From Phallusia mammillata (taxonomy: Eukaryota), in the NCBI GenBank assembly GCA_965637545.1, contig OZ281500.1, forward strand, positions 8,990,001 to 9,054,000: 64,000 nt of DNA. The letters run 5' to 3'. The notes under the pieces were generated by a model, which did no database searches, was not told where the DNA came from, and saw only the letters and a list, made by a program, of their open reading frames with translations. Position 1 is the first letter of the stretch, and each line of letters opens with the position of its first letter. The translations under genes and the position numbers were made by a program. Of the stretch, positions 7,105-29,815 are shown piece after piece.

Positions 7105-7630
7105 CAGACTTGGACAACTAGATAATTCTAGTTGTCTAGTTGGGCAAATTAGAGCAAAATGGCGGTAATTGTAGTTCTAATCTAATTTAGAATTATCGAG
7201 TAAGCTCTAATTCTAATTCTAATCTAATTCACAGTTTTCCCAAAATTGCTAGTTTGTCCAACGGCACTTTTAGGCATGTGATCTGAGCATGCATTTTTTA
7301 ACCATAACGCACAAAACCATGCAATTAACAAGACCAAACTACATCACTGAAACACGTTTATCAGTGAAATTTGGCACTCAGCTCCGTTTAAACACGTTTT
7401 AGACGCACCGAATCGTATTGTTTTAAATGTGCAAATCTACAAGTTTAAATTTGAAACAAACTAAAGTTGATTGGCTTAAATCTAATTCTAGTTTGAATTC
7501 TAGTTTAATTTCTAGATTTTGAGAAAATTCTAATTCTAATTCTAATCTAATTTGCAAAAAAAGGAGATGCTCTAATTTTAATTCTAATCTAATTTGAAAA
7601 ACCGAAAAAAAATCTAGTTGTCCAAGTCTG
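7105..7630. mobile_element. hAT-type MITE, family A (526 bp)
   Basis: TIR cagacttggacaact...agttgtccaagtctg. Exact 8-bp TSD ccacaaac (7097-7104 / 7631-7638). AT-rich subterminal ttctaattcta repeats; no ORF. Second copy at 10885. Confidence 0.92.
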
Positions 7631-8079
7631 CCACAAACCAGGCGACTCTGATAAGAGTAACCTCGCTCCAAGCAAACAATTCAACGACCAACCATATCGC
7701 GAGGCGTTGCAACTTTTTTCCTACATGTTTATTCACAACCCACAGAGTTGTACCGTAGCCGGTACAGTGCATAGAAACTACAAGTACTCCTTGAACATGA
7801 CAAAGCGTACGCACTGTACTGTTGGCTGTGATGTGATCAAAAACCGTTTGGCAATATAGATCCAATCTTTCTTTAAGTTTCTTTTGTCGGTTGAACTAGA
7901 AAGCAGTTCTATCAGTAATATTTTGTTGGCAACTGGAATAGGTATTTCAGTCAAAAATAACAATTTTAGGTTTAAGTTCTTTGTATACCAAAGTTTATGT
8001 ACTCTGAAGATGCATGTTTTGTTTGTTTTGAGACTTTTTAACAGAATCAGGTTGCCATTAGTTAACACATTAAGGAACA

Positions 8080-9659
8080 ATGCCTACCTATAAACTTTGC
8101 TACTTCGACATTCGCGGATTGGGCGAAATGATTCGTCTCATGTTCAAAGATGCTGGTGTTGAGTTTGAAGACTGCCGAGTAAATTTCAACGACTGGACTC
8201 CGATAAAACCAAGTAAGTGGCAAAAAACAGTACATATATAACCTGCATTACAAGTATAGATTTATATTGGATTATTTTTGCAGCGATGCCTTTTGGTAAA
8301 ATGCCTGTGTTATTTGTGGACGGCAAACCGTTGGCCCACAGTCGAGCAATTGTGCGGTATCTTGCAAGAGAGTTAAATTATTCCGGGCAAAATTCGTTCG
8401 AAACAGGAGAGATTGACGTCTGGTTTGAAACTTTGTTTGAGTTATTCGACAAACTTCCATGGTCGGAAAATGATGAAACTAAAAAGGTAAGTCGAGTATA
8501 GGCTAAGAAGTCGAGACGTAATGCTTACTACGTCATTGTTTCCAGGCGGAGCTAATCATCAAGTTTATGAAGGAAGAGGCAGGGCCAAAATTTGAGAAAC
8601 TGGAAGCGCAGATCAAGGCAAATGGTGGGCCATATGTGATGGGCAAGGTATGTCGGACTTTTATGTGATCGTTTGTGTAAAAATGTTCGCTGCTAAAAGT
8701 TAAACTTTAGAAAGTCCCTATTGTCCTCATACTTGGAATGTGGTTGGATATTTACCGTCATCAGACCACTTCGGCGTAGTTTTTATTAGAGATGTACCGA
8801 ATATTCGGTTTGCCGAATTTATTCGGCCGAATCGGCCACTTTTGCAAAGATTCGGTTTCGGCCGAATAATTTGTTGCGATTCGGCGGAAACCGAATCTTT
8901 TATGAACACACATTTGAAGCGTTAAGCGTGTCTTTCCTGCTAAGTACATCAGTTATTATATTTTTTACCACATTATCGTTTTCCCCACTGCAGACAACTA
9001 AATAGTAATTTATTGTCGGGTTGGAAATTATGCTTAAGGCAATGTTAAACCCCACAGAACTGAAATAAGGACGAAACACAACCATTCTGCACTAATTGCC
9101 TGGTAGATAAACTAATGTTTTCATGTCAAACGCGTACCGTACGACTTCGCGTGACGTCATAAATGATTCGGTTGATTCGGCCGAATTTATTCGGCAAAAC
9201 CGCCGAATATTCGGTTTCGGTCGAATCGAAATTTCGCCGATTCGGTACATCACTAGTTTTTATCACAACAAAAGGACAGCCATACGATCCTATGCTAATT
9301 TCTTTGTCACCAGCAGATGAGACCTGATATTGGTCGAAACAGTGTGTCTGGTCTAAAACTTATCAAAATCTTATACTTTTCTTAAGAGTGCATGATTAAA
9401 AATTTATTACCTTTAATTTGGTTTTAGGAAAGTAACTTTCGATATAACTTTCCTAATAGTCATGTTCAAATAACATTGTGTCTTATTTTAGAACGCGACA
9501 TTTGTCGATTTTGCGATGTTGGGGCTTGCCGACCTGTTTCTGAGTAAGTTTAAAATCGCACTTGATGATTATCCGGGAGTCATGAAGCAGCTTAAAGCAA
9601 TGAGAGAAAGGCCAAACGTGGCGGCATGGATTGCCAAAAGACCAAGCAGTGATTTTTAA
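8080..9659 (+). CDS. Glutathione S-transferase, sigma-class-like (GST-1)
   Basis: Exons 8080-8212, 8284-8486, 8546-8647, 9492-9659. [20 protein letters not shown] (catalytic Tyr motif), MPFGKMPVLFVDG, HSRAIVRYLARE, RPNVAAWIAKRP. Confidence 0.93.
8787..9255. mobile_element. hAT-type MITE in GST-1 intron 3
   Basis: TIR tagagatgtaccgaat / attcggtacatcacta (1 mismatch). Exact TSD gtttttat (8779-8786 / 9256-9263). Subterminal ccgaat/attcgg repeats at both ends. Confidence 0.9.
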
Positions 9660-9801
9660 GCGGCAGTCATTTGTAATAATGACTCGTATGTCGGCTATTT
9701 TCCAATAAATCAATTTCATGTACATTATCGGTTGGTTATTTGCGTCTCTCATAGCCAGTTTTGTTGCACAAAAACAAGCAAAAACTCTGCATGGCTCATG
9801 A

Positions 9802-10042
9802 GTGACTAAGCAAATATTTGGCTTCAATATATGACTTGGCAAATATGGCCGACGTGACTATAATGTCTTGGAATAGTCCTGTGGCGGTTAGAGATAACGT
9901 GCTGCTTTAATTATGTTTGACGTCCATTGGTATTTGTTTTAGATGCCACAGCAAACATGCGCCACATAACTTTACCATCATGTGTCACTATGCTTGTTGC
10001 GTCCAAGTGCACGTGAACAAAATAAGATACGATGACGCAGCA
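9802..10042 (+). promoter_or_regulatory. Cluster of antioxidant-response-element (ARE; Nrf2/CncC-sMaf) motifs upstream of GST-2
   Basis: gtgactaagca (9802-9812), atgacttggca (9831-9841) and atgacgcagca (10032-10042), each followed by an AT-rich tetramer. They fit the RTGAYnnnGCRwwww consensus. Function is inferred. Confidence 0.7.
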
Positions 10043-10333
10043 AAATCTCGCAATGTAAGCAAGTTCTCGAAGCAATCGTGGTATGTTGTGGAGACGCGGC
10101 AACGTATCGTTACTAAATGAGGTGTGGCCGTTGCCACTGCGCCCTAAAGCATGGCATGCGTGACCGACTGGAGCATGACTAATGTTCTTTCATCCGTTGC
10201 CAAGTAATCAATCACCTTCTCTTGCTTAAAGCCTGCGGCACGAACGGAAACGTATGGCTGCGCATGCGCGTGTAGAAAAGACTGAGCATTGGACCCAGGG
10301 CGTGTACAAGGCTGTGTACAAGGAAGTTCGATT

Positions 10334-10521
10334 TGGTATTGTTTTGCAGCTAACAGAATTTACACAGAACTAAGAAACCTGTATTTGTCAACATGCCTGT
10401 ATACACGTTAACATACTTTCCTGCCCGTGGTATTGTTTTGCAGCTAACAGAATTTACACAGAACTAAGAAACCTGTATTTGTCAACATGCCTGTATACAC
10501 GTTAACATACTTTCCTGCCCG
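10334..10521 (+). repeat. Exact 94-bp tandem duplication spanning the 5'UTR splice acceptor and the first codons of GST-2
   Basis: 10334-10427 is identical to 10428-10521 (tggtattgttttgcag...tttcctgcccg). It creates an upstream ATG at 10393. Confidence 0.95.
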
Positions 10522-12759
10522 AGGTATCGCCGAGATGTCTCGGTATGTGTTTGCAGAGGCTGGTGTGCAATACGAAGACATTCGCGTTACAGGAGACGAA
10601 TGGCCGAAACTGAAGCCAAGTGAGTAGCTTTTTAATTCAAAGTAAACAAATTTGAAACTGTTTTGACCTATAAGATTTTTTCACTGTCGCTGAAAGAAAG
10701 ACACAGGGGCCTTACACGCAAGTGTAGCTTGGTTTCAGCTCACTGTTATCTATGTATTTGTATTAATATATGTAACCGGTGTTCTTACGTTACAGTTTTT
10801 AGCAAATCATGTCAATTTTGCTATACTGTACAGTAGCAGAAACAGGCCTCTGACGCTAATTTACAAGCTAACGGCGGCTGTGTGCAGACTTGGACAACTC
10901 GATAATTCTAGTTATCTAATTCGTCAAATTAGAGCAAAATGGCGGTAATTCTAATTCCAATCTAATTTAGACATACCGAGTAAGCTCTATTTCTAATTCT
11001 AGTCCAATTCACAATTTTCCCCAAAACGCTAGTTTGTCCAACACAGTGGTTCCCAAACTTTTTCATATTTTTTTCTAAACGGTCCCTTTGCCATTATTTC
11101 GAGGGCTCGCGGTCCTTAAGCCTCATAAAAACGAAAGTTGATTGCAGGATTTTAGCTAGTTGTGCAAAATTGCGCATAACAATCATTCAAAGACAGCATG
11201 TGACATCACAAACAGGACAAAAAATATTACGATTGTGCGCGAACAATTGCATTTTTGATAGTTGTCATTCAATAAAGGCCATTGTTTAGCAATGGAGACA
11301 GTCGATTCTCAATTCTACTTTGATTTAAACTTATTTAGTGGCACAAACTGACGCCAAATAAGATTATAGAATTACTTCAACCGCTTCGCGGTCCCCCCAA
11401 AATTGCCTCACGGACCCATAAAGGACCGCGGACCCCAGTTTGGGAACCGCTGGTCTAACAGCATTTTTATGCATGTAATACAAGTATGCGTTTTATGTCC
11501 AAAGCGAACATAGCTATGTCACCAACAAGGCCAACCCACATCATTGAAACATGTAAACGAGTTTTAACCACGCTGAATTATACAGTTCAAAACGTGTAAA
11601 TCGTGGAGTTTAAATTTGCAATGTACTACAGTTGGTTGGTTTTAAATCTAATTCTAGTTCGAATTCTAGTTTAATTTATGTTTTTTTTAAAAAAAGTGGT
11701 AATTCTAATTCTAATATAATTTGTAAAAACTGGGATGCTCTAGTTTTAATTCTAATCTTATTTGAAAAAACGAAAAAAAATCTAGTTGTCCAAGTCTGGC
11801 TGTGTGGGAACGCCCGGAATGAATTTGGTCAAATTGATAAACCATACAAAAAAAATTACAGACACACCCTTCGGCAAAATGCCGTATTTAACTGTGGACG
11901 GCAAATATGTCGCCCATAGCCGTGCCATTGTTCGCTTCCTGGGCAGAGAATTTCGTTTGGATGGAGAAGATTCATTAACCGCTGCTAGACTCGATGTATG
12001 GATAGAACAACTATTTGAAACCTACTCTTCTATGCCTTGGACGGAAGAGGACGAAGACCAAAAGGTATTATAGACCAGCGGTCGGCAACCTTTTTATGAC
12101 TGCCGACCGTTTTTGATACTGAATTTTTATCGCGGACCGGCCTTTAAAAAACTACAAATATTTAGCAATGAAAACGCACAAATTCGTTTATCATCGCCGG
12201 GATACATGGGCAAAATGTTTTAAAGTATTTAGCTTGAAAAACTATACGGCCCGGTAAAGAACTCGTCGCGGACCGGCGGTTGCCAATCACTGTTATAGAC
12301 GAGGTTAGAAATCATATGCTCATCACACCGAATGATATGTTTTTTGTAGGCTAAGTTGCTGGCAACGTGGGAAAAAGAGACTCTTGCGCCAAAGCTTGAG
12401 AAGTTAGAGGCGGAAATAAATGCGGCTGGAGGTCCTTTTTTCCTTGGCAAGGTAATTAATCTTTTCAGTTTTCTATCATTTTTCAGTCGGAAGACTCAAA
12501 ATAAACTATGCACAATTTGAAAAACATTGCACGCGAGTTGCAGTGGCCAGGCGTTATGCTTAATTTCAAAACATATCATTATGCCTTACAGGATGTTTCC
12601 ATTTTGGATTTTGTCATTTTGCCAATTTGCGAATTTATGAAAGGAAAGTGGAACCTTGACTTGGCGCAGTTCTGCACGTTGACGAAGCTAAGGGAAGCCG
12701 TGGCTGCTCGACCAAACATCGCTGCCTGGATCAAGAATCGCCCCGAAACTCCATTGTAG
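10487..12759 (+). CDS. Glutathione S-transferase, sigma-class-like (GST-2)
   Basis: Exons 10487-10619, 11862-12064, 12350-12451, 12592-12759. MPVYTLTYFPARGIAEMSRY, TPFGKMPYLTVDG, RPNIAAWIKNRPETPL*. Confidence 0.93.
10885..11798. mobile_element. hAT-type MITE, family A, in GST-2 intron 1, carrying a nested element
   Basis: Same TIR as the 7105 copy. Exact TSD gctgtgtg (10877-10884 / 11799-11806). The paralog GST-3 has the empty site (gcgactgtgtgggaacg, ~14955). Confidence 0.92.
11044..11452. mobile_element. hAT-type MITE, family B, nested in family A
   Basis: TIR cagtggttcccaaact / agtttgggaaccgctg. TSD gtccaaca / gtctaaca. The uninterrupted host site is visible in the 7105 copy. Confidence 0.88.
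12076..12292. mobile_element. hAT-type MITE in GST-2 intron 2
   Basis: Imperfect TIR cagcggtcggcaacc / ggttgccaatcactg. Exact TSD ttatagac. Absent from the matching GST-3 intron (gtattaaagacgaggtt). Confidence 0.88.
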
Positions 12760-12929
12760 CACATTTAATCGTTGTTTTGTTTGTTGTTTAAATATCGAAA
12801 ATTGGTCGATTTGTCTCATAATAAAATTGCATGATACACACTCACAATATAATACAGGGTTTCTTGTGGGTTAGCTTTTCAATTGCCGATGGGTCTATTT
12901 CTTGGTCTAGTCTAGCCATTCACCTAAGG

Positions 12930-13301
12930 CAGTGGTGGCCAAACTACGGCCCGCGGGCCGCATCCGGCCCCCAGTCCTGTTTCATCCGGCCCGCCAAACA
13001 CATTGCCTGGTTTTTTTTCCAAGCACCATATTTACCACTGTGAACAAGCAGTTCAACAGCGCTGGCTGCTACTAGCAGTAGCTTGTGGCACGCGTTGTTA
13101 TTTTTAGAATAAATGCCCTTGCAGCGTTATTTTTAGAACAGTCTGCCAACCACGACGTATGACGTAACTACAATAATATATATTTTAATAAAGATGGCAA
13201 CCAGTTACGACAAATTTTACGTAAAACTCATTTAATCCGGCCCTCCAGTGGCAAGACAGTTGCAAATTTGACGCTCTGGTAAAAAAGTTTGGCCACCCCT
13301 G
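12930..13301. mobile_element. hAT-type MITE downstream of GST-2
   Basis: TIR cagtggtggccaaact / agtttggccacccctg. Exact TSD acctaagg. Subterminal ggcccgc/ccggccc motifs. Confidence 0.9.
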
Positions 13302-13727
13302 ACCTAAGGTATAAGGATAGGTGGTACGAAGCGATAGAGAAAGTTGTCAGGTGGTACGCGGTCGGTATAAGATTGAGAACCACTGTTTTAATCAACTTGT
13401 ATTGAGTTTATTTGAGTTTTTCGTGATCGTTTGTCTAAAAATGTTTGCAGCTAAAAGTGTCGTCTGATTCCTAACTTTGACCCAGTTTGTTCACAACATT
13501 AAAAACGGCTATACTAGCATATGCGACCCAAATCACCAGTATATAAGACCTTTATAGGTCGAAAGAAGTGTGTCTTGTTAAAAGCTTATACTTATCATTA
13601 AACAAAAATGCTTAGATACAGTGCATTTCTCAAGAGTGCATGATATCAAATTTATTACCTTTAATTTGGTTTTTAAAAAGTCAACTTTCCTAAAAGTAAT
13701 TTTCTATCTATATTATGTGTTACTTAC

Positions 13728-13895
13728 AACGTGACGTTTGTCGATTTTGAGATGTTGGGGCTTGTCGATCTGTTTCTAAGTAAGTTTAAAATTGCACTTG
13801 ATGATTATCCAGGAGTCACGAAGCAGCTTAAAGCAATGAGAGAACGGCCAAACGTGGCGGCATGGATTGCCAAAAGACCAAGCAGTGATTTTTAA
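13728..13895 (+). pseudogene. Orphan copy of GST-1 exon 4 with a destroyed splice acceptor
   Basis: 168 bp aligning to 9492-9659 with the frame still open (NVTFVDFEMLGL...RPSSDF*). The acceptor ttttag is replaced by acttac. No copies of exons 1-3 lie upstream. Confidence 0.85.
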
Positions 13896-14033
13896 ACGGC
13901 AGACATTTGCAACAATGACTCGCATGTCGGCTATTTTCCAATAAATCAACTTCATGTACATTGTCGGTTGGTTATTTGCGCCTCTCATAGCCAGTTTTGT
14001 TGCACAACAACGAGTAAATCTTTGCATGGATCT

Positions 14034-14349
14034 ATGACTAAGCAAATATTTAGCTTCAATATGACTTGGCAAATATGACCGACGTGACTAATGTCTTGGA
14101 ATAGTCCTGTGGCGCTTACAGATAACGTGCTGCTTTAATTATGTCCGATGTCCATTGATATTTGTATAAGATGACACAGCAAACATGTGGAACATGACAC
14201 ATCGAAATCCCGAACTATAAGCAAGTTCTCGAAGCAATCGTGGTATGTTGTGGTTAAGACGCGACAACGCATCGTTACTAAATGAGGTGTGGCCGATGCC
14301 ACTGCGCAGTGAAGCATGGCGCACGCGACCGACTCGAGCATGACTAAGC
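14034..14349 (+). promoter_or_regulatory. ARE motif cluster upstream of GST-3
   Basis: atgactaagca (14034-14044), atgacttggca (14061-14071), atgacacagca (14171-14181), atgactaagc(t) (14340-14349). Confidence 0.7.
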
Positions 14350-14431
14350 TTTTTCCTCCGTTGCTGAGTAACCAATTACCTTCTCTTGTTTAACCCCTGC
14401 GGCACGAACGGAAACGAAGTGTTTGCGCGTG

Positions 14432-14439
14432 TATAAAAG
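14432..14439 (+). promoter_or_regulatory. TATA box of GST-3
   Basis: tataaaag just upstream of a putative non-coding exon ending at donor 14490 (5'UTR intron 14490-14625). The matching GST-2 site reads tagaaaag. Confidence 0.55.
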
Positions 14440-14669
14440 GCTGAGGAATGGACCTAAAGCGTGTACAAGGCTGTGTAAAGTTCGATTCGGTAACTTGACG
14501 CCTAAAGTCACTGCGCCGAAATGGCTATTGTTGAAAGTTGTTGTGTAGGGTCTGTCGGCAGCAGTTTACAAGTGATTTGAGATACAAGTGACTTGTACGT
14601 TGTGTTTCAACCTGATTTTTTGCAGCTAACAGGTTTTACACAGAGCTAAAAAAAGTTGTATTTGTCAAC

Positions 14670-15698
14670 ATGCCTGCATACAAGTTAACATACTTTGATG
14701 TCCGAGGTTTGGCCGAAATGTCTCGGTATGTGTTTGCAGAGGCCGGTGTGCAATACGAAGACGTTCGCATCAAAAGCGATGATTGGCCGAAACTGAAGCC
14801 CAGTAAGTAGCTTTTCAATCAAACTAAACAAATTTGATACGTAAGTGTGGCCATGGTTATAGCTCACTGCTTTTTATGTATATGAAGCATTTGACTTTTA
14901 CTATACTGTACTGTAACAGAAACAGGCCTCTAACGCTAAACTAACAAGATAGCGGCGACTGTGTGGGAACGCCCGGAATGAATTTGGTCAAATTGGTAAA
15001 TCATACAAAATCTACAGGCACACCCTTCGGCAAAATGCCGTATTTGTCTGTGGACGGCAAAGAGGTCGCCCATAGTCGTGCCATTGTTCGCTTCCTGGGC
15101 AGAGAATTTCGTTTGGATGGAGGAGATTCATTAACCGCTGCTAGACTCGATGTGTGGATAGAACAACTATTTGAAACCTACTCTTCTATGCCTTGGACGG
15201 AAGAGGACGAAGACAAAAAGGTATTAAAGACGAGGTTACATAATCAATTGGTCATCACACCAAATTATATGTTTTTTGTAGGCTAAATTGCTGGCAACTT
15301 GGGAAAAAGAGACTTTGGAACCAAAGCTTAAGAAGTTGGAGGCTGAAATAAATGCGACTGGAGGTCCCTACTTCCTTGGAAAGGTAATTGGCCGATCTTT
15401 TCAGTTTTCTATCATTTTTTAGTCGGACGGCGATAAATGAATTATGCATAATTTGGAAAACATTGCGCTGTCCAACGTGAGGTGCTGTGGCGTTATTCTT
15501 AATTTCAAGGAATATTATTATGCATTACAGGATGTTTCCATTTTGGATTTGGTCATTTTCTCAATTTGTGAATTTATGAAAGCGAAGTGGAACCTTGACT
15601 TTGCGCAGTTCTGCACGTTGACGAAGCTAAGGGAAGCCGTGGCAGCTCGACCAAACATCGCTGCGTGGATCAAGAAACGCCCCGAATCTACTATTTAA
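14670..15698 (+). CDS. Glutathione S-transferase, sigma-class-like (GST-3), close paralog of GST-2
   Basis: Exons 14670-14802, 15018-15220, 15282-15383, 15531-15698. MPAYKLTYFDVRGLAEMSRY, TPFGKMPYLSVDG, RPNIAAWIKKRPESTI*. Confidence 0.93.
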
Positions 15699-16625
15699 CA
15701 CGTTTAATCGTTTTTTTGTTGTTACTCGAAAATTGGTCGATTTGCCTCATAATAAAATTGCATGATACACACTCACAATGTAATACAGAGTTGGTTGCCA
15801 GTACGATTTTCAATACAGAATACGCTTTGCCTTTGCCAACTGATCTGTAGTTTTGGCGAGGTGAGGTTAATTCGCTTGATGGAAAAAAAGAGACACCATT
15901 GCATTGAAATAATTGCCGAGCCGGAAGTAGCTGCATGACGTCATGTGACAAGGCAACCATAAGAAAACGCACTGGATCAATAGGTTAATATATTGCAACC
16001 TGAGAAATATAAAAACGAGTTTCACAAAACACATGCACTCGCTCGTTTTAAAGGCGTTAGATAAACTTTAGGTAACAGTTTGTAAATCGGTTTAACTTGG
16101 TGTTTAAAAATACACTTCATTTTTTTGTAAAGATCATCTTAAAAAAATTTAACACAAAAATGTAAACGTTTGTCATAAAACGTGCCTCACAAAGTATATT
16201 TCCAGCAGCAACGCGATATACTGTATTTAAAACATTTTTACAAACCAAACGGAGTTTGCAGGCAAAGCACAGCGTAAAGTTTATTGCAGGCACGGGTGTT
16301 TCCTGGTGTCAAATAGGTAAAGAATTCCAACAGTTGTCGTGTACACCACATAACAAAAACAAATGTGTAAGATACAAAGTGATTTGCATTTGATAGTAAC
16401 AATAATAAGATTCCTGCTGCAATAAACTAAAATCCACATTTTTAGTGCCATGAAGTGTTTTAAAGCAATTTGTATCGAGTTTTTGAACCAACTGGTATAT
16501 TGTGACCACTTTTAAAATGTTTGTCTGGCTATTATTTTTTTAGTGCCTGTATTGTATTTCTGTTTCACTTTTTGCTTAAGCCCATAAACCACAACTCGTT
16601 TTGTAGAAAAAAAAGTCTAAATCGT

Positions 16626-16671
16626 GTTACATAGATAGGAAGGTTACATAGATAGGAAGGTTACATAGATA
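16626..16671. repeat. 17-bp minisatellite, about 2.7 copies
   Basis: Unit gttacatagataggaag. Confidence 0.85.
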
Positions 16672-17341
16672 CAGGAGCCCCAAAAGTATAAAGGCTCTAT
16701 TTAACAGTTACCAAAGAAATACCTCAGTATAGATGGCTTTACGTTCGGGAAAGGAAACTATTTTCTCGCTTGGTAATTTCGATTGGCCCGTTTGTGTATA
16801 GATCAATGGAATAAAACCATGGTGACGTGCTGCCATTGGGCACCAGTATGTACAATGCAGATTGGAATTTCCCAGCATTCGCTTCGCGTCTAAAATTCTA
16901 GGTATTGTATAAGAAAACTGCTTGTCCTCACACAGCTTCCTGTCGTTGTGCCAGTGTACGTTCACCATCATGCTGCCTGACAAGCGAAAACGTTATGCAT
17001 ATCATTGTTGACAGCCCAGTTAGTGCTGAATCCATACGCACCCAGCAGTCATTATAAAGGAAGTCAAACAGTATTTTTAGGCTAAAGGCTCGTCAATTTA
17101 ATGTGGTAAAGCTTTGCGGACGCCACAAGAAAACATACTGCCTTAGCCTAAGTGGCAAAGGTTCTACAAGCGGGGCAGATTTAACGCAGAGATCACGACG
17201 TAAACTTGACTCAGGAATTGCAACTTTGGCAATGCAAATTTACTATTGTGACGTAATTGTTTAAATATTTTGTATTCGTGTCAGCTGTAGGTACAATTTG
17301 TGAGATACTAATTCTTGCTGCAAAAGCATTTGTCATTAACA

Positions 17342-19750: not shown

Positions 19751-20318
19751 TTCGTTTTATATGTTATTCTTTGCGTTTTCTGCTGTGTGGTATAATGCTG
19801 CTCATCACACCCGCAACTGTATTTTGTATGTCAAAAACTGGTTTGTATATAACTGTGCAAGGTGTTTTATAATTAGTCCCTTTACCTTTTTGCTGTAAAT
19901 TTGCACAAGCTGTACCCTTCATTTGCATTGACATGCGATTTTAAAAAACGAATGGTTACTGTGTGGCTTTAGTGCGTTTGGTCATGTAGCTTCATGTTCA
20001 ACGTTGGGCAACAATTTTCTGCTTGATAATTCTGAAGCATGTCTGTGGCTGTGTTTTTTACACCAAGCGATGAAAGTCTTAACTTACCCGTGATATTATG
20101 CTTGGTTTTGTATATGTTGCCTATAATAAAGTCTACGATGACAAATTGGGCCTAATATGGTCTTAGGTGAAATGTTAGCTAAAAACATTACTAGCGATTT
20201 TTTCTATGATCGCGGCAATTTGAACAGTTTGGGTGTAATAGTATACCAGGCGAATAGAGTGGGATACATTTGCAGTTGTTTGCCGAGGCACGCAATCATT
20301 TCGAGAACGTTCGAGACG

Positions 20319-20423
20319 ATGACTAAGCATACTTTTTACTCCACACTTCGGTCGATTTAAAACGAAATTGAGAGTATGACGATGCAAAATTTCTCATCCA
20401 GTGTACCACACCGTGACACAGCG
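20319..20423 (+). promoter_or_regulatory. ARE motif cluster upstream of GST-4
   Basis: atgactaagca (20319-20329), atgacgatgca (20376-20386), gtgacacagcg (20413-20423). An AP-1-like tgagtca lies near 20679, beside a TATA-like tataag. Confidence 0.68.
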
Positions 20424-20981
20424 ATATTTGAAAAGTTGAAACTAACTATTCAGCACAATGGAAAAGCAGTTTCGTATTTTGTTCGCCGGTTTACCGAGTT
20501 ACGTTGCTCAACGCGCTATGGCGGTTGTCAAGCAACTCTTTGCTTCTTTCCTTCTCTTTCATGACGCAAGGAGGAGAAGGTGAAAGGGCGCGCACCGTTT
20601 CGCGTGATTGGTTCGTTAAAAAGAACTTTAAGAACTTTCACGCTGGGCGGGCGAGCAACAGAAAAAAATGATTTGACTTGAGTCAAATGTATAAGTGCCA
20701 GCATAGAGTGAGTGGTATTCAGTGTTGTCTTGTAATTTTATGTTGGACTTGTGGTAAAGTATACTGCTGTGCAGCTTTTAGTTACCAGCTTGTTAAATAG
20801 TAAATTTCTTGTTAAACAACAAGTTCGAGTAGGTTCTTAAAATTTCAGTGTTTCTGCCAGCAACCTTGTTAATAGACAAATGTAAAATTAAGGCAGCTGT
20901 GAAGTCTAAACTATGCACGCGTCAACCTAACACGTTGTTTTTTTTACTTTGTAGCAAGTCAAATCACCAATAACAGCAATT

Positions 20982-22110
20982 ATGCCTGAATACAAACTTT
21001 GTTACTTTAATGCCCGTGGTTTGGGAGAACTGGCCCGACTTCTGTTTGCAGAGGCCGGTGTGGAGTACAAGGACGTTAGGTACAACAGCGAAGAATGGCC
21101 TAAGCAAAAACCCAGTAAGTATCGGATGTCTCAATCTAGAGCAAAATTTTCACTCCACGGTACCTACTTTGTAGGCCAACATAACAAAATTTTTAAATAG
21201 AAAGTTATCTTGCAACTTTATTGTAGATCAACTTTATTATTGTAGATTGTTTTTTATGGCAAACAAGAAAAGATTAACTTCTTAACATTGTCAGGAACAC
21301 CCGCATTTTGTAATCACGTCCTAAAACACCAGAGAATGTTTGAACTTTAAATTTGGCCACTTTGGCACGACACTTTGAATCTCTTGGTACACACTTAAGA
21401 ATTACTAATGGAGAGGCCTTACATTCTAAAGTTACGGTTTTATTTGTTATGTGTTTCTAGCTATGCAATTTGGCCAGATGCCTGTGCTTTTTGTCGATGG
21501 GGTCCAAATTGCTCACAGCCGTGCAATAGCACGATTTCTTACCCGCGAGTTTAAACTGGATGGGGGAAGCTCGCTCCAATCAGCTCTAATCGATACTTGG
21601 ATGGAGGTGCTGTTCGAAACATTTCAAAATCTTCCGTTTCGCGAACAAGACCCGACTGCAAAGGTGAGTCATAAAATGTCCATTTAGTATTTCCCTCATT
21701 AGAGTGACACCATTGATTTAATCCACAGGCAGAAAAATTAGCTACCGTCATGAAAGATAACATCGGACCAAAGCTGGAAAAACTTCAGGAACAGAGTAGT
21801 TCGACACCGGGACCATACATCTTTAAAGATGTGAGTGTTATAAACACGCAATTTTACTAATTCGTCTCTTTACAGTTCAAACAAATCACAAAAGTAGATC
21901 TTACCTTATGCTGTTTGACTTATTTATTGCTTGTTTTGGACGCAGTTCACAGCCGCTGATATCATTGTCTATGCGATCACCGACTTCTTGGTCAAATCCT
22001 TCAAAGTGGACCTCATTTGCTATCAAGGAATCACAAAACTTCGTGATGCAGTAAGCCAAAGACCCAACATCAAGAAATGGATTGAAGCTCGTCCAGACAC
22101 CGAAAATTAG
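20982..22110 (+). CDS. Glutathione S-transferase, sigma-class-like (GST-4)
   Basis: Exons 20982-21114, 21461-21663, 21729-21830, 21946-22110. MPEYKLCYFNARGLGELARL, MQFGQMPVLFVDG, RPNIKKWIEARPDTEN*. Confidence 0.93.
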
Positions 22111-23534
22111 ACTTGTGTGACAAATTCGTCTGTGATTTTGTCAATGTGTGTTAAAGTACTTTTTAATTGTGTTTGCCCCTGTCAAAAATAAAAGAAACGA
22201 TTTACTCTCAAATATTTATTGGTTTGTTTATGACTTTCTATCGATTGCCATGTAGCTCTGCTCTGGACCAGAGGTTCGCAAAGAGCGGGACCCAAATTTT
22301 GGTCGCGAAACCATCAACTTAGCGTCGCGAAAACCTAAACGTAAAACCAAAAACGACAAATTCTTCCCATGTTTCTTGCTTTGCATACGTTCATGCAACT
22401 AAATGTACAAGAAGAGCAATGTTATTCTTTATATACCGTAGCTTGTATTGGGTGATTTTATTGTCACACAAAGTGCTTGCAATATTTCAACTTCAGGTTT
22501 CGCAGCAAAACAGCGATATAGTGTAGTAATTCGGTGAGAGTTTGCTATGTGAAGTTATGTACTAGGCTTAAAAAATTCTGGGTCGATCCAAAAGTGTTTG
22601 TGAACCCCACTGCAGAAATACAGGCTGCGACTTGCGACAAATATAACTTGCAGTTGTGAACAATATTGCTACAGCATTTGATGTTGGTTTCTGTAGCTGT
22701 AACTTTTAAAGATACTTTTATTACAAAGGCCACTTGCAATTGCGCACAGGTGGGATTTTCGCTGTTCAAGGCAATTTTGCTGCCAACAAAACGTAATGCT
22801 TATTTTGTTTGGGCATTCCTACTCTAAGCACCCACGTTTGTACCAGACATGGGGTCGAATACACGCGTCCTGTATTTGAATACTTTACGAATACCTGCCT
22901 AGCTGTATTTTAATTCATGAATACTTTGTTAATTTTTAAGTGACAGCAATTGGAATAGTATTAGAATAAAACGAGTCAAGCATTTGTATTCATGAATAGT
23001 TGCTTAAAAAACAACATAGTGTAATTCGAATACTATTCGAATAAACCCCAAGCGTGTATTCGCATTTATGAATACTTACGTACTTTTTGAGATGTAGCAA
23101 TTCGAATTTTATCGAATTAATAGTTCTAGTTATTTGTATTCTGGAATGGTTCAGTTGATGTAAGAAGCAAACAGTTCGAATAGTATTCGAATGCACCGAT
23201 TTGGGTATTTGTGATTGCAGAAAATAAAGCACCCCGAAACTTAAAAGGTATTCGAACAAAAAGTAACATTTCAGTTTATGAATTGCAAATTTATTGGTAA
23301 AAATATAAACCAACGAGCTTTGTTTTGCCACAATAGCTTGACTGATCTGAGTCTCCATTAGGCCTATATACCCCAAATTTGCATGAGGTGTTGCTTCCGA
23401 AACACGCTACACCTGTCATGTGCTGAGAACAACACAATGTTGCAAGCTTTGTACCACAATTCTATTTAAAAACATCACAATCAAACTTATGTGTGTCATT
23501 GTTTCGTAACATCAACTGAAACAATCTGGAGGTA

Positions 23535-23715
23535 ATCGACAATTCGTATTGTATTCGTAAAAATGTAGGTATAGGCATGTATTCGATTTTACGAATTGTT
23601 ACGTTGCCACAGACTCACAACAATTCGAATTGTATTCGTACAAATGTAATCATGTATTCGATTTTACGAATTGTTACGTTGCCAAAGGCCGACAACAGTT
23701 CGAATTGTCTTCGTA
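23535..23715. repeat. 75-bp tandem repeat (about 2.5 copies) within an attcgaat-rich repeat remnant
   Basis: catgtattcgattttacgaattgttacgttgcca at 23576 and 23651. The surrounding 22850-23720 region is rich in ttcgaa/tattcg motifs. Confidence 0.75.
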
Positions 23716-24260
23716 AAGCATTACCGTTTAATGAAAGAGAAAAAGCAATTTCATATTTTGACCACCTGTTTACAGAGCAACTTTGCTTAAGCACGCTAAT
23801 GCGATTGTCAAGCAATAGCAGGAGCTAGAGCTCTTTCTTTTTCCCTTCTCGTTCACGACGCAAGTCGGAGAGGGTGATGGAGCGCGCACCGTTTTGCGTG
23901 ATTGGTTCGTTAAAAACTTCTATATTGGGTGAGCACTGAGCAAGCAACAGCAAAAATGATTTGATTTGAAGCTAGCCAAACTTATACCAAGCAGCATAGA
24001 GTGTGTGGTAATCAGAGTTGTCTTATAATTTTATGTTGGACTTGAAGTATATTGCTGTGTATTTTGAGTTACCAGCTTGGTAAATAGTAAATTTCTTGTT
24101 AAACAACAAGTTCGAGTAGGTTCTTAAAATTTCAGTGTTTCTGCCAGCAACCTTGTTAATAGACATAATGTAAAATTAGGGCAGCTGTAAACCATGCACG
24201 CATAAACCAAACACGTGTTTTTTTTACTTTGTAGCAAGTAAATCACCAATAACAGCAAAT

Positions 24261-25390
24261 ATGCCTGAATACAAATTGTGTTACTTTAACACCCGTGGTT
24301 TGGGAGAAATGGTTCGGCTTCTGTTTGCAGAGGCCGATGTAGCCTTTGAAGACGTTAGGTACAACAGCGACGAATGGCCTAAGCACAAAGCCAGTAAGTA
24401 TGTCCCAATCTAGAGTAGCGTAAAATATAGAGCAAAACTGCACGGTATATTTTGCAGGCCAATATAAAAAAGTTGTCTAAAGAAAGTTAATTCGCAGCTT
24501 TATTGTGGATTTGCTTGCTTTTTTATGGCAAACAAAATAACTTCTTAACATTGTCATGAACGCCCACATTTCATAGTCAGGTCCTAAAACACCAGAGAAT
24601 GTTGAAACTTCAAAATAGCCAAACTTTGGCGGGACACTTGGAATCTCTCTTGGTACACAATTTGAGAATCACTAATGTAGAGGCCTTTAATTCTAATGTT
24701 ACTATTTTTATTTGTTATGTGTTTCTAGCTATGCAATTTGGCCAGATGCCTGTGCTTTTTGTCGATGGGGTCCAAATTGCACACAGCCGTTCAATAGCAC
24801 GATTTCTCACCCGCGAGTTTAAACTGGATGGGACTGGAAGCTCGCTCCAATCAGCTCTAATCGATGCTTGGATAGAGGTGCTGTTCGAAACATTTCAAAA
24901 TCTTCCGTTTTACGAACAAGACCCTACTGTAAAGGTAAATTATAAAATGTCATAGTATTTCCCACATTAGGGTGACACCATTAATTTAATCCAAAGGCAG
25001 AAAAATTAGCTACCGTCATGAAAGACAACATCGGACCAAAGCTGGAAAAACTTCAGGAACAGATTAGTTCGACACCGGGACCATACATGTTTAAAGATGT
25101 AAGTAATATTAAGACGCAATTTCACTAGTTTGTCCCTTTAAAGTTCAAACAAATCCTTTGTCACAAAAAGCAGATTTTACCTTATACATGCTGTTTGACG
25201 TATTTATTACTTGTTTTGAACGTAGTTCACAGCCGGCGATATCATTGTCTATGCAATCACTGACTTTTTGATCAAGTCCTTCAAAGTGGACCTTAGTTGC
25301 TTCCAAGGCATCACAAAACTTCATGATGCAGTAAGCCAGAGACCCAACATTAAGAAGTGGATTGAAGCTCGTCCAGTCACAGAAAATTAG
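24261..25390 (+). CDS. Glutathione S-transferase, sigma-class-like (GST-5), close paralog of GST-4
   Basis: Exons 24261-24393, 24729-24934 (3-nt insertion versus GST-4), 24997-25098 (AAG acceptor), 25226-25390. Intact frame. Confidence 0.9.
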
Positions 25391-26133
25391 ACTTTTGCGA
25401 CAAGTTCGTCGATGATTTTGTCACTGTTTGTAAAGTGACTTTTTAATTGTGTTTGCCCCTTTTAAAAAGGAAAGAAACGGTTTACTCAGAAATATTTATT
25501 TGTTTGTTCTATGACTTTCTATCGATTGCCGTGTAGTTTAGGGTTGCCATACGTCAGGATTTTCCCTGACGTGTCAGGGAATTAAGTGTTTAAATCTGCG
25601 TCAGGGAGAAATGGTAAAATGTACTAAAAAGTCAGGAATTTAAGAGAACAAAATATATGCTATGAAATTAATGTACCAACGGAAAAACGTTTCTAGTAGT
25701 TAGCTATAACCGCGTCTATACCATGCAGCGTAAAGATGCAAACTAGCGGCGCGCATGTTAACGCACAAGCCAACTGTTTCGTTTTGCAGTGTGTGGGCGC
25801 GCAGCAATACCTGCTTGTTACGAGTTGTCTGACAATACGCGTTAAATACAGAAATAAAAATCTGCGTCTCACGAAAACACATAGCATTCGATGCTACGTG
25901 GGAAGTTTCATTTGCTTTAACTGTTTATCTAATATGCAAGGAACTAACTAACAACAAAAAGTCGAATGTCGTGGGACAGAAAAACGTTTTCACAGTGGCA
26001 TTTTATTTGAAATGTAAAAAGGTGACAATCAGAGTATCGTATCTAACGTTTTCTCGTGTCGCCGTCCGTGGGACTTTCGAATATTCAAAATTTATTCCGT
26101 AATAGAAGTGTTTGGATCGCAAAATGATTAACG

Positions 26134-26551
26134 TAGCGGTTCTCAAACTAGGATCCGGAGTCCTTTCGGGGTCCGTGGGGCAATTTTGCGGGGACCGCGA
26201 AAAGGTGGAAGTAATTCTATATTCTTATTTGGCGTCAGTTTGTGCAACTAAATAAGTTTAAAACAAAGTGAAAGTGAGAATCGACAGTCTCCATTGCTAA
26301 ACAATAGACTTCATTGCATGACAACTAACAAAAATGCAATTGTTCGCGCACAACTGTAATGTTTTTGTCTTGTCTGTGATGTCAGATTTGGATCATTGTT
26401 ATTCGCAATTTTGCATAAATAGCTAAAATCCTGCAATCAACTTTCGTTTTATCTGAAATACACATTCCAGCTAAAAAAACGCGAGCCCTCGAAATAATGG
26501 CAAAGTAACCGAGCGTTTAGAAAAAATAATGAAAAAGTTTGGGAACCACTA
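26134..26551. mobile_element. hAT-type MITE, family B (opposite orientation to the 11044 copy), nested in D
   Basis: Reverse-complement homology to 11044-11452. TSD gattaacg; its right copy is split by element C. Confidence 0.88.
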
Positions 26552-26554
26552 GAT

Positions 26555-26869
26555 CAGTGGTTCCCAACCGGGGAGGAATTCCTCCCTAGGGAGGAATTTT
26601 AGGAGTTCAGGGGAGGAATTTCATAAAAACTGTAAAAGAAATTTACATTGGAAATGTTACACAATATTTTTGTACACACATTATTATGTCCATTATAATT
26701 TGGACCCGGTTGTAAAGGATTCTGAAATGGACATCCCTAATTATAAGGTCTATTTCAAATTGCTATAATTTTTTATGTTAGCCTATTTGTTTTTCGTCTT
26801 ATGGGGAGGAATGAATAGTTCGAAAATGGGCAAAGGGAGGAATGTAACAAAAAAGGTTGGGAACCACTG
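26555..26869. mobile_element. hAT-type MITE, family C, inserted at the right end of B
   Basis: TIR cagtggttcccaacc / ggttgggaaccactg. Exact TSD cactagat (26547-26554 / 26870-26877). Subterminal ggaggaat repeats. Confidence 0.92.
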
Positions 26870-27550
26870 CACTAGATTAACGCAACTGAGATAAATTTTG
26901 TCAGGGATGGGGTATCATAAAATATGGCAACCCTAGTGTAGTTCTGCTCTAGACCAGGGGTTCGCAAACAGCGGGACCCAAATTTGGTCGCGAAACCATT
27001 ACACCAGCGTCGTGAAAAACCTAAACGTTATATAACTTCTTGTCATGTTTCTTGCTTTGCATAAATTCATGCGACTAAATGTACACCAAGACCAATGTTA
27101 TTCTTTTTATACCGTTGCTTGTATTTAGGTGATTTTGTTGTCACACAAAGTGCTTGCTAACGAGTGTCTGTTACGTCACAGTACCTTTAGGTTTTGAACC
27201 AAAACAGCGATCGTTAGTACAGTATTTCGGGTGAAAGTTTGGTAAGTGAAGTTATGTACTAGGCCTCGAAAATTGATCACAAAGCATTGCTTTTGTGTAC
27301 CTTAGGTCGAAAATATACAGCGACAAATATAATGTGCGGTTGTGAACAATGTTGCTTGGCGCATCGGCGAAGCATTTGGTGTTGGATAGCTGTAACTTCG
27401 CAAAATATTTTATTACTAAGACAACCTGCCGTAGCGCACAAGTAGGTTTTTCGCTGTTTATTTTGCTGCCAAAAACGTACTGCTTTTGTTTGAAGCATTC
27501 TAAGTATAAGCACGCTGGTTTGTACAGACCACCGAAACGATACTGTATGG

Positions 27551-27851
27551 CAAGGGTGCGCAACCTGCGGCTCTTGAATAAAGGTTGTGGGGCCCGCAGA
27601 GACGCTTGGATTTCAAATGTACTGGCAAACGAGTCCAACTATCATATATTTCTGAGCAGATTAATGCGCCCGGTGCTATTTTTATGCGACCTGGCAATAT
27701 GTGACTAGAAGCAAGTGCGGATTTTACTTGTAGTTAAGCATATTTTGTATGCAAAAAAGTAAAATCACCTTGTGTTATACACAGGTACGGCCCGCGATCT
27801 TATTTTGCCAATTGTATTTGGCCCCACAGTAACAAAGGTTGCACACCCCTG
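27551..27851. mobile_element. hAT-type MITE
   Basis: TIR caagggtgcgcaacc / ggttgcacacccctg. Exact TSD ctgtatgg. Confidence 0.87.
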
Positions 27852-28667
27852 CTGTATGGTATTGTTCACAGGAACAGGAAATGTAGGCTACTTCGTTGAG
27901 GAAGTACCATCCAAAATAGCTTTACGCTACCACACAGTTTTTGCTTTCATTTGTTGCTTTACAAAAACTGACACCACCAAGCATATTAAAACCTACCGTT
28001 TAGACCACGTTATGAACGTCAATTTTTTATTTCAGTTAAAACCGAATACTGTTTTCGTCCACGATCACGTTTTGTTTTTGCCGCGGGAAAAATATCGTGA
28101 CGCAAGTAATGCGAACGTGTGGCATCGCACGTACCGGGGTGCTTATATGAGGGGCATTTATAACGCGCCTGGACATTGTAAAGTTTAGCCTCGTATTGAG
28201 ATAGCTCACAGAGTTGGTACATTCGAAAATCTGCATCTCAAAAACGTTTGCTTGTTTATCGATGTTAGTTTGGTTGTATTTTTGTCTGGTATTGCCGAAA
28301 TGCGCTGGAAAATTTCAAAAGCAGTGTACAAGCAATACCTAAAATGAACAGTGACAGCAGAGTAGTAGATTACAATGAAATAGACATCAGCAAATTTCAC
28401 TCACAACATTGCGTAAGTATTGGTTACAGGGTAGGCAAACATATCGAATTGGTACTTATGCTGTGGAAAACGGTATATTTGCTTTCGTGGAAACAGGTAA
28501 AGATTAGGCTTTGTATTTTTTTGATTACACGAATATATTCTATTGCGCAATCAGTTAGCCTAGAGTAGAGTATCAAGACATCGGCATTTTATGTTTGCTC
28601 ACACAAAACGTCTGGGAGAGCAGCTCCGGCAAAATAAAAACTGTTACCCGAAACGCTGGAAACGTTT

Positions 28668-28715
28668 TGCTGTGTCATTGTACTCGACACTCGATAACAT
28701 TGTTTGCTTAGTCAT
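28668..28715 (-). promoter_or_regulatory. Two ARE motifs (minus strand) upstream of the GST-6 start codon
   Basis: tgctgtgtcat (28668-28678; reverse complement atgacacagca) and tgcttagtcat (28705-28715; reverse complement atgactaagca), both with AT-rich flanks. Confidence 0.68.

Positions 28716-28997: not shown

Positions 28998-29815
<818 letters not shown>

What the first reader, a model, noticed from the sequence alone, without database searches (positions are those of the whole stretch)
7797..28715. Shared ARE (Nrf2/CncC) code across otherwise unrelated GST promoters
The same 10-mer TGACTAAGCA occurs at 9803, 14035, 20320 and (minus strand) 28705, upstream of GST-2, -3, -4 and -6. The GST-2/3, GST-4 and GST-6 promoters share no other evident homology. 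Further RTGACnnnGCR sites, most with AT-rich 3' flanks, sit at 7797, 9831, 10032, 14061, 14171, 14340, 20376, 20413 and 28668. I noticed no such clustering in the rest of the window, though my search was by eye. This suggests a coordinated electrophile-response regulon over the whole cluster.
Basis: partly seen in the sequence, partly recalled or inferred. Interest (0 to 1): 0.7.

Follow-up and report, generated by a model that had tools for sequence, protein, structure and literature searches.

The report
ARE-like motif clusters upstream of sea-squirt GSTs
Five of six neighbouring glutathione-transferase genes of the sea squirt Phallusia mammillata have, just upstream, clusters of the DNA motif that Nrf2-type stress factors bind in vertebrates; the signal is statistically real but expected for detoxification genes, and its function is untested.

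Summary
TGACTAAGCA occurs four times, at the stated places (expected 0.11). RTGACNNNGC occurs 19 times in 64 kb, 13 of them within 1 kb upstream of the six GST start codons.

The window is Phallusia mammillata: GST-4 encodes UniProt A0A6F9DK42 exactly. It holds six intact sigma-class GST genes, all on the + strand.

GST-2 and GST-3 are a tandem duplicate, so their sites are not independent. With GST-3 dropped, five 1-kb upstream regions still hold 9 sites against 0.55-0.93 expected.

The longer form RTGACNNNGCAAA occurs 9 times (0.44 expected), and all 9 lie upstream of GSTs. Sequence flanking the 10-mer shows no homology between GST-2/3, GST-4 and GST-6, so no repeat carries it.

The sites are not AP-1, CRE or palindromic Maf sites. 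Five of their six core sequences are identical to experimentally supported vertebrate AREs.

Three limits apply. GST-5 has no site and GST-1 one weaker site. A shared 10-mer alone is not rare by chance. GST-4 mRNA is spliced-leader trans-spliced, so transcription start sites are unknown.

Support from another ascidian, Clavelina, is partial. Binding and induction are untested. AREs had already been predicted in silico in Ciona, so this is a well-supported new member of a known kind.

The parts
7797..7807 (+). Single ARE-like site upstream of GST-1 (ATGACAAAGCG), 283 bp before the ATG. It lacks the A-rich 3' flank.
   Evidence: The core TGACAAAGC is identical to the mouse Gsta1 / rat Gsta2 AREs listed in PMC6007815.
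9802..9814 (+). GST-2 site A (GTGACTAAGCAAA). It lies 144 bp after the GST-1 stop and about 95 bp after its AATAAA signal.
9831..9843 (+). GST-2 site B (ATGACTTGGCAAA)
   Evidence: The core is identical to the rat Nqo1 ARE.
10032..10044 (+). GST-2 site D (ATGACGCAGCAAA). The GST-3 counterpart is mutated (GC to TC).
14034..14046 (+). GST-3 site A' (ATGACTAAGCAAA), paralogous to 9802
14061..14073 (+). GST-3 site B' (ATGACTTGGCAAA), paralogous to 9831. It is the only site with a TMA box (TCAATATGAC).
14171..14183 (+). GST-3 site C' (ATGACACAGCAAA). The GST-2 counterpart reads TGCC.
14340..14349 (+). GST-3 site E' (ATGACTAAGC, followed by T). The GST-2 counterpart is broken by a 1-bp insertion.
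20319..20329 (+). GST-4 site 1 (ATGACTAAGCA), 634 bp upstream of the spliced-leader acceptor
20376..20388 (+). GST-4 site 2 (ATGACGATGCAAA)
20413..20423 (+). GST-4 site 3 (GTGACACAGCG)
28703..28715 (-). GST-6 site 1 (ATGACTAAGCAAA on the - strand), about 300 bp before the ATG
28666..28678 (-). GST-6 site 2 (ATGACACAGCAAA on the - strand)
8080..9659 (+). GST-1, sigma-class GST, 201 aa. Exons 8080-8212, 8284-8486, 8546-8647, 9492-9659.
10487..12759 (+). GST-2, 201 aa, 4 exons
14670..15698 (+). GST-3, 201 aa, 4 exons. Tandem duplicate of GST-2.
20955..22207 (+). GST-4 mature mRNA. Exons run to 21114, then 21461-21661, 21727-21830 and 21946 to about 22207. CDS 20982-22110, 200 aa, identical to UniProt A0A6F9DK42. 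The 5' end carries the spliced leader, joined at the AG of 20953-20954.
24261..25390 (+). GST-5, 201 aa, 88% identical to GST-4. No consensus ARE upstream, and no mRNA contig in the four runs laid.
29016..29815 (+). GST-6, 202 aa, 4 exons

Best explanation
The window carries a tandem cluster of six intact sigma-class glutathione S-transferase genes of the ascidian Phallusia mammillata. Upstream of GST-2, -3, -4 and -6 lie groups of two to four antioxidant/electrophile response elements of the form R-TGAC-nnn-GC-AAA. GST-1 has one weaker site. The proposed mechanism is this: the single ascidian CNC-bZIP factor (Nrf) pairs with the small Maf protein. Nrf contacts the RTGAC half, and Maf contacts the GC plus the A/T-rich flank. 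When Keap1 is inactivated by electrophiles or oxidants, Nrf accumulates and raises transcription of these GSTs. Shown here: the motif, its extended consensus, its strong and specific concentration upstream of the GSTs, the absence of any repeat carrying it, intact genes, and expression and SL trans-splicing of GST-4. Inferred: which factor binds, that the sites act as enhancers, and that they confer inducibility. GST-5 lost the sites because the duplication that made it began downstream of them, so it probably escapes this control.
For: The 10-mer occurs 4 times against 0.11 expected. Of 19 RTGACNNNGC sites, 13 lie in the 6 kb upstream of GST ATGs. After dropping the paralogous GST-3 promoter, there are 9 sites in five 1-kb upstream regions. 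Random windows give 0.55 (maximum 4 in 5000 draws) and dinucleotide shuffles give 0.93 (maximum 7 in 2000). The motif ranks first of 96 scrambled decoy motifs, and the next best scores 5. Positions that were not used to choose the sites also conform: R at -1 in 11/11 sites against 6/23 elsewhere, and GCAAA in 7/11 against 0/23. RTGACNNNGCAAA gives 9 hits against 0.44 expected, all upstream of GSTs. The flanks are non-homologous between promoter lineages. None of the 13 sites is an AP-1 TRE, a CRE or a palindromic MARE. The cores TGACTAAGC, TGACTTGGC, TGACAAAGC, TGACACAGC and TGACGCAGC are each listed as experimentally supported vertebrate AREs in PMC6007815. Ciona has one Nrf, one Keap1 and one MafK (PMC3292500 Table 1; PMC6155405). 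In amphioxus, sulforaphane induces gstp (PMC11989980). In Clavelina lepadiformis, 6 of 9 RTGACNNNGC sites and both RTGACNNNGCAAA sites lie upstream of GST genes of the homologous cluster. GST-4, which has the sites, is assembled as mRNA in four runs from four studies. GST-5, which lacks them, is not.
Against: There are no binding, accessibility or induction data. GST-5 has no site and GST-1 only one, so the cluster is not uniformly covered. The Clavelina support is marginal: 9 sites against 4.8 expected, positional p about 0.06, and three of its five GSTs have none. A third ascidian-like contig (L002) has no proximal site. The TMA box of the vertebrate extended ARE is present in only 1 of 13 sites. 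Conservation of sites A and B between GST-2 and GST-3 is uninformative, because a dead relic exon in the same duplication is 89% identical. Transcription start sites are unknown because GST-4 mRNA is trans-spliced. The presence of Nrf, MafK and Keap1 was taken from Ciona literature and not checked in Phallusia. In Ciona robusta, the one GST measured fell under cold stress while Nrf2 rose (PMC7031352). Contigs cannot prove that GST-5 is silent.
Confidence: 0.62

Rival explanations
1. The sites are real cis-elements, but another bZIP combination uses them: a large Maf on half-sites with an A/T-rich flank, a Bach-like repressor, or an ATF/C-EBP-type heterodimer. They would set constitutive, tissue-specific GST expression, for example in gut or blood cells of this vanadium-rich ascidian, rather than electrophile induction.
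For: The GC plus A-rich flank is the Maf-type half (established knowledge of Maf recognition, not tested here). Two sites have a TGACG core (10032, 20376), which ATF-type factors also accept. GST-4 mRNA is present in four runs from four studies that were picked only for holding GST-4 and whose samples and treatments are unknown here. GST is a vanadium-binding protein expressed in blood cells of a related ascidian (PMC9486056).
Against: The invariant half is RTGAC (GTCAY on the other strand), which is the CNC half. The Maf core TGCTGA is not kept: the sites read TGCTTA, TGCCAA and TGCTGT on the other strand. There is no palindromic MARE, CRE or TRE in the sites. Basal and inducible roles are not exclusive, since vertebrate AREs also drive basal expression.
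Confidence: 0.22
2. The pattern is chance plus duplication: a short degenerate motif that happens to recur, inflated by the GST-2/3 and GST-4/5 tandem duplications and by post-hoc choice of the 10-mer.
For: Two of the four 10-mers and two further site pairs are paralogous. Some 10-mer shared by at least 3 of 5 promoters arises in 21-46% of controls.
Against: With paralogues removed there are still 9 sites against 0.55-0.93 expected, a count never reached in 5000 random-window draws or 2000 shuffles, and the motif ranks first of 96 decoys. The flanking positions, which played no part in selecting the sites, also conform. All 9 RTGACNNNGCAAA hits are upstream of GSTs. The shared 10-mer belongs to a class defined in advance that makes up about 0.1% of all 10-mers.
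Confidence: 0.04
3. The motif rides on a dispersed repeat or transposon fragment that landed near several GSTs.
For: The window does contain dispersed repeats, for example 11045-11451 matching 26550-26135 and 7105-7630 matching 10885-11798.
Against: Self-BLAST finds no match between the three ARE regions. Smith-Waterman scores of their 200-bp flanks equal the shuffle mean.
Confidence: 0.02

Closest known systems
Vertebrate antioxidant/electrophile response element (ARE/EpRE) of phase II genes such as Gsta1/Gsta2, Nqo1, GCLC, Gsr and Hmox1, bound by Nrf2-small Maf
   Same: The core is RTGACnnnGC. The 3' flank GCR plus A/T run matches. Five of the six core 9-mers are identical to experimentally supported AREs (PMC6007815). 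Sites occur in multiples a few hundred bp upstream of GST genes. There is no embedded AP-1 site, as in the review's class IV example, mouse Mrp2 ATGACataGCA.
   Different: The genes are sigma-class GSTs; the AREs I read in that review are of alpha- and pi-class and microsomal GSTs (Gsta, Gstp1, Mgst1), and mu-class ones I know from memory only. The 5' TMA box is absent in 12 of 13 sites. The organism has a single Nrf that resembles Nrf1 but carries a Keap1-binding Neh2 domain (PMC6155405). Function is untested here.
In-silico ARE predictions in Ciona robusta antioxidant genes (PMC7031352 for GST, SOD, CAT, GPx; PMC8772837 for Prdx3/4)
   Same: Same consensus (RTGACNNNGC / TGACNNNGC), same animal class, and the same inferred Nrf2-Keap1 logic.
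   Different: In the passages of those papers that I read, sites are reported as counts or as single distal sites (-1514, -1601), and I saw no background statistics. Here the enrichment is tested against shuffles, random windows and decoy motifs, an extended consensus emerges, and several paralogous genes share it.
Squid S-crystallin / sigma-GST promoters with an ARE next to the TATA box (SL11 and SL20; PMC5737492 Fig. 9 legend)
   Same: Sigma-class GST lineage genes with ARE-type elements in the proximal promoter.
   Different: From memory of the older literature, not checked here, the squid elements overlap an AP-1 site and serve lens expression. The Phallusia sites lack the AP-1 core.
Drosophila CncC/Maf-S control of gstD genes and C. 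elegans SKN-1 control of gst-4 (established knowledge, not read here)
   Same: A CNC-family factor driving GST genes in invertebrates.
   Different: SKN-1 binds as a monomer to a different motif. Fly targets are delta/epsilon-class GSTs.

Membership tests
Antioxidant/electrophile response element (CNC-small Maf binding element) | Core sequence RTGACnnnGC | tested here: met
   13 sites upstream of five GST genes
Antioxidant/electrophile response element (CNC-small Maf binding element) | Density above background and specific to regulatory DNA of detoxification genes | tested here: met
   9 independent sites against 0.55-0.93 expected, first of 96 decoys. All 9 RTGACNNNGCAAA hits are upstream of GSTs.
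Antioxidant/electrophile response element (CNC-small Maf binding element) | Extended 3' consensus GCR followed by an A/T run (Wasserman-Fahl consensus as quoted in PMC6007815) | tested here: met
   GCAAA in 7 of 11 independent sites against 0 of 23 elsewhere, p = 6e-5
Antioxidant/electrophile response element (CNC-small Maf binding element) | 5' TMA box of the 20-bp extended ARE (classes I and II) | tested here: not met
   Only 14056-14070 fits TMAnnRTGACnnnGC. The sites resemble the 11-bp class without a TMA box or AP-1 site.
Antioxidant/electrophile response element (CNC-small Maf binding element) | Bound by a CNC-bZIP / small Maf heterodimer | not testable with these tools
   Nrf, MafK and Keap1 genes are reported for Ciona. 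They were not verified in Phallusia, and there are no binding data.
Antioxidant/electrophile response element (CNC-small Maf binding element) | Confers induction by electrophiles or oxidants | not testable with these tools
   No treatment RNA data could be examined. Only the presence of GST-4 mRNA was shown.
Antioxidant/electrophile response element (CNC-small Maf binding element) | Presence at homologous genes in other species | tested here: inconclusive
   In the Clavelina GST cluster, 6 of 9 sites are upstream of GSTs, but only G1 and G4 have any (p about 0.06). L002 has none.
AP-1 TRE / CRE / palindromic Maf recognition element | TGA(C/G)TCA, TGACGTCA or TGCTGA(C/G)TCAGCA | tested here: not met
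   None of the 13 sites contains these. The only TRE in the upstream regions is at 20679, beside the GST-4 TATA-like box.
Sigma-class glutathione S-transferase (the genes) | GST_N plus GST_C_3 domains, about 200 aa, closest to sigma GST / haematopoietic prostaglandin D synthase structures | tested here: met
   Pfam hits. PDB hits 1zl9, 1gsq, 3vpq and HPGDS. Six intact 200-202 aa models.

The most novel reading that the evidence does not exclude
The extended element ATGACTAAGCAAA may have been held by selection in three promoter lineages whose proteins have diverged to 43-50% identity and whose remaining non-coding DNA no longer aligns. That would mean the full ARE grammar, CNC half plus Maf half with its A-rich flank, was fixed before vertebrates split the Nrf family. 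It would also mean the single tunicate Nrf-MafK pair has a narrower optimum than vertebrate Nrf2. The cluster belongs to the protein family that includes a vanadium-binding GST of a related ascidian. An Nrf regulon here could therefore tie metal and redox handling in a vanadium-accumulating animal to electrophile sensing, with GST-5 as a natural 'ARE-deleted' paralogue.
Probability: 0.15. Interest if true: 0.5.

Novelty: new member of a known kind. Interest (0 to 1): 0.33.

Why it matters
ARE control of GST genes is textbook biology in vertebrates and flies, but in tunicates it rests on uncontrolled motif spotting. This locus offers a compact, statistically clean set of candidate AREs in a species where reporter electroporation is routine. 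It also provides a built-in control: GST-5 has the same core promoter block as GST-4 but no AREs. That makes the conservation of Nrf-Maf target recognition at the base of the vertebrate lineage directly testable. It does not change current understanding.

Tried and rejected
- **P0001 genomic context:** The exact-protein look-up for P0001, meant to give mRNA or genomic context from public assemblies, found nothing.
- **Paralogue conservation as footprinting:** I rejected it as evidence. Sites A and B are identical in GST-2 and GST-3, but a dead relic exon in the same duplication is 89% identical, so the duplication is too young to be informative.
- **TATA boxes and 5'UTR introns:** I first read TATA-like boxes followed by short exons with GT donors as 5'UTR introns. 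RNA contigs then showed that the GST-4 acceptor receives the spliced leader. These features are therefore only candidate core promoters inside an outron.
- **The exact 10-mer as evidence on its own:** Rejected after controls.
- **Repeat-borne motif:** Rejected.
- **Literature-derived PWM:** Not built, because it would have required typing many sequences. IUPAC consensus scans with shuffles, random windows and decoys were used instead.
- **Literature gaps:** Searches for Phallusia with Nrf2, and for squid S-crystallin with ARE, gave nothing directly usable. The first S-crystallin query was malformed.
- **Earlier notes of this scan:** None reports AREs elsewhere in this genome.


Full report
**Observation.** The 10-mer TGACTAAGCA is present at 9803, 14035 and 20320 on the + strand and at 28705 on the - strand. 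That is four matches against 0.11 expected, and no shuffle of 100 reached four. RTGACNNNGCR gives 16 matches against 4.63 expected. The listed site at 14340 is ATGACTAAGCT, so it fits the core but not the final R.

**What the locus is.**
- Exon-sized ORFs carry GST_N and GST_C_3 domains. They match sigma-class GST and prostaglandin D synthase structures.
- A word search found a 200-aa Phallusia mammillata GST, UniProt A0A6F9DK42. The stitched GST-4 exons encode it exactly. The window is therefore from this ascidian.
- All six genes are on the + strand. They share a four-exon structure and have intact 200-202 aa reading frames.
- Identity to GST-4 is 88% for GST-5 and 43-50% for the others.

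**Duplication history and independence.**
- Self-BLAST shows 9307-12883 matching 13533-15814, the GST-2/GST-3 duplicate, at 76-93% identity. It also shows 20462-22255 matching 23741-25536, the GST-4/GST-5 duplicate, at 83%.
- The GST-2/3 duplicated unit starts inside the last intron of GST-1. A relic of GST-1 exon 4 sits at 13728-13895, is 89% identical, and has lost its acceptor AG.
- In the promoter alignment, sites A and B are kept in both copies. Site C is intact only in GST-3, D only in GST-2 and E only in GST-3. The duplication is too young for this pattern to count as footprinting.
- The GST-4/5 homology begins about 40 bp downstream of the last GST-4 site. GST-5 therefore never received the sites. 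Its upstream kilobase has only TTAC near-misses, inside a tandem repeat.

**Statistics.**
- Of 19 RTGACNNNGC sites in 64 kb, 13 lie within 1 kb upstream of the six ATGs. That is 2.2 per kb against 0.10 per kb elsewhere.
- With the paralogous GST-3 promoter dropped, five upstream kilobases hold 9 sites. Random sets of windows give 0.55 (maximum 4 in 5000 draws). Dinucleotide shuffles give 0.93 (maximum 7 in 2000). The motif ranks first of 96 scrambled decoys, and the next best scores 5.
- Positions that played no part in choosing TGACNNNGC sites also conform. A purine precedes 11 of 11 upstream sites against 6 of 23 elsewhere. GCAAA follows 7 of 11 against 0 of 23.
- The resulting 13-mer RTGACNNNGCAAA has 9 matches against 0.44 expected. 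All nine lie upstream of GSTs.
- An unbiased k-mer count finds TGACTAAGCA as the only 10-mer shared by three or more independent promoters. However, some shared 10-mer arises in 21% of Markov simulations and 46% of real-sequence controls. The weight of the evidence therefore rests on the consensus defined in advance, not on the 10-mer.
- The 200-bp flanks of the 10-mer in GST-2/3, GST-4 and GST-6 align no better than shuffles. This excludes a repeat carrier.

**Kind of site.**
- None of the 13 sites contains an AP-1 TRE, a CRE or a palindromic MARE. Only one has the TMA box.
- The invariant parts are RTGAC and GC, with an A-rich tail. That is the asymmetric CNC-plus-Maf arrangement.
- The cores TGACTAAGC, TGACTTGGC, TGACAAAGC, TGACACAGC and TGACGCAGC are each listed among experimentally supported vertebrate AREs. 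TGACTAAGC, for example, is listed for human GCLC, mouse Gsr1 and mouse Hmox1 (PMC6007815).

**Position relative to transcripts.**
- Contigs from four runs of four studies lay on GST-4 with exons 20953-21114, 21461-21661, 21727-21830 and 21946 to about 22207.
- Two of the contigs carry, 5' of 20953, an adaptor-like tail (GAGTACGGG, which I recognise from memory as a template-switching primer end) followed by ATTCTATTTGAATA. Together with the genomic AG, this reads as the 16-base ascidian spliced leader, recognised from memory and consistent with this scan's earlier unchecked notes on this genome.
- GST-4 mRNA is therefore SL trans-spliced and its transcription start is unknown.
- All six genes have a similar pyrimidine-AG acceptor 19-45 nt before the ATG.
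- The sites lie 283-684 bp before the ATGs and upstream of TATA-like boxes at 7852, 10272, 14431, 20688 and 28835. These boxes are candidates only.
- Site A of GST-2 lies 144 bp after the GST-1 stop and beyond its AATAAA at 9704, so it is intergenic.
- No GST-5 contig was seen in the same four runs. This fits loss of the sites, but contigs cannot prove silence.

**Other species.** The Clavelina lepadiformis cluster was rebuilt from L001 and L004 as 36.7 kb with five GSTs.
- It has 9 RTGACNNNGC sites against 4.8 expected. Five lie within 2.2 kb upstream of the first GST, and two of these are ATGACTCAGCA. One lies at -426 of the fourth GST.
- Both RTGACNNNGCAAA matches are upstream of GSTs.
- Three of the five GSTs have no site, and the positional test gives p about 0.06.
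- An ascidian-like metagenome contig (L002) has no proximal site.
- Cross-species support is therefore suggestive only.

**Literature.**
- Ciona has one Nrf, one Keap1 and one MafK (PMC3292500). Its Nrf carries Neh2 with DLG/ETGE motifs and an Nrf1-like N-terminus (PMC6155405).
- Sulforaphane induces gstp in amphioxus (PMC11989980).
- AREs with this same consensus have already been predicted in silico upstream of Ciona robusta GST, SOD, CAT and GPx (PMC7031352) and of Prdx3/4 (PMC8772837). I saw no background statistics or functional test in the parts of those papers that I read.
- Squid sigma-GST-derived S-crystallin promoters are annotated with AREs (PMC5737492).
- I found nothing on Phallusia GST regulation.

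**Verdict.** The motif clusters are real, specific and of ARE type. Control of GST-2, -3, -4 and -6, and perhaps GST-1, by an Nrf-small Maf heterodimer is the best explanation (about 0.6). Another bZIP partner setting basal or tissue-specific expression is the main rival (about 0.2). A regulon covering the whole cluster is not supported, because GST-5 lacks the sites. This is a new, well-controlled member of a known kind.

Noticed in passing
window 20953-20955: GST-4 mRNA contigs carry an adaptor-like tail plus ATTCTATTTGAATA, then the genomic AG at 20953-20954. This shows the gene is spliced-leader trans-spliced. All six GSTs have a similar acceptor 19-45 nt before the ATG. The '5'UTR intron' discussed for GST-2 in note s1-405545 may therefore be an outron, and the 94-bp tandem duplication (10334-10527) may have copied the acceptor plus the ATG.
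   Followed up: partly
window 13728-13895: A relic copy of the last exon of GST-1, 89% identical, with the reading frame open but the acceptor AG lost. It is followed by the copied AATAAA. It shows that the GST-2 to GST-3 duplication unit began inside GST-1 intron 3.
   Followed up: yes
window 20679-20697 versus 23975-23988: GST-4 has a palindromic AP-1 site (TGAGTCA) directly before a TATA-like box (TGTATAAGTG). Both are mutated in the otherwise conserved GST-5 promoter block. A GT donor-like site at about 20785 is also deleted in GST-5.
   Followed up: no
window 18401-19750: An intronless 449-aa ORF with a rhodopsin-family 7TM domain (Pfam 7tm_1, E = 2e-16) lies between GST-3 and GST-4. No RNA contig covered its 3' end (from 19600) or the downstream spacer up to the GST-4 leader acceptor (19600-20952).
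   Followed up: no
window, the 1 kb upstream of each of the six GST ATGs: The AhR/XRE core GCGTG occurs 14 times in these 6 kb, against 5.5 expected from its density across the window. This was not corrected for paralogy or GC content.
   Followed up: no
window 11045-11451 versus 26550-26135, and 7105-7630 versus 10885-11798: Dispersed repeats: an inverted 83% copy shared by GST-2 intron 1 and the GST-5/GST-6 spacer, and GST-1 upstream DNA repeated in GST-2 intron 1.
   Followed up: no
window 8080-29815 (the GST proteins): Phallusia mammillata is a vanadium-rich ascidian, and a GST is listed among the vanadium-binding proteins of Ascidia sydneiensis samea blood cells (PMC9486056). These sigma GSTs may be relatives of it. 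Homology to that protein was not checked.
   Followed up: no
window 23539-23715: An 81-bp tandem repeat upstream of GST-5 carries two GTTACGTTGCCA(A/C)A units at 23599 and 23674. These are one mismatch (TTAC for TGAC) from the ARE core.
   Followed up: partly
window 33166-34383: A 405-aa intronless ORF with a group 1 glycosyltransferase domain (Pfam Glycos_transf_1, E = 7e-13) lies downstream of the GST cluster.
   Followed up: no
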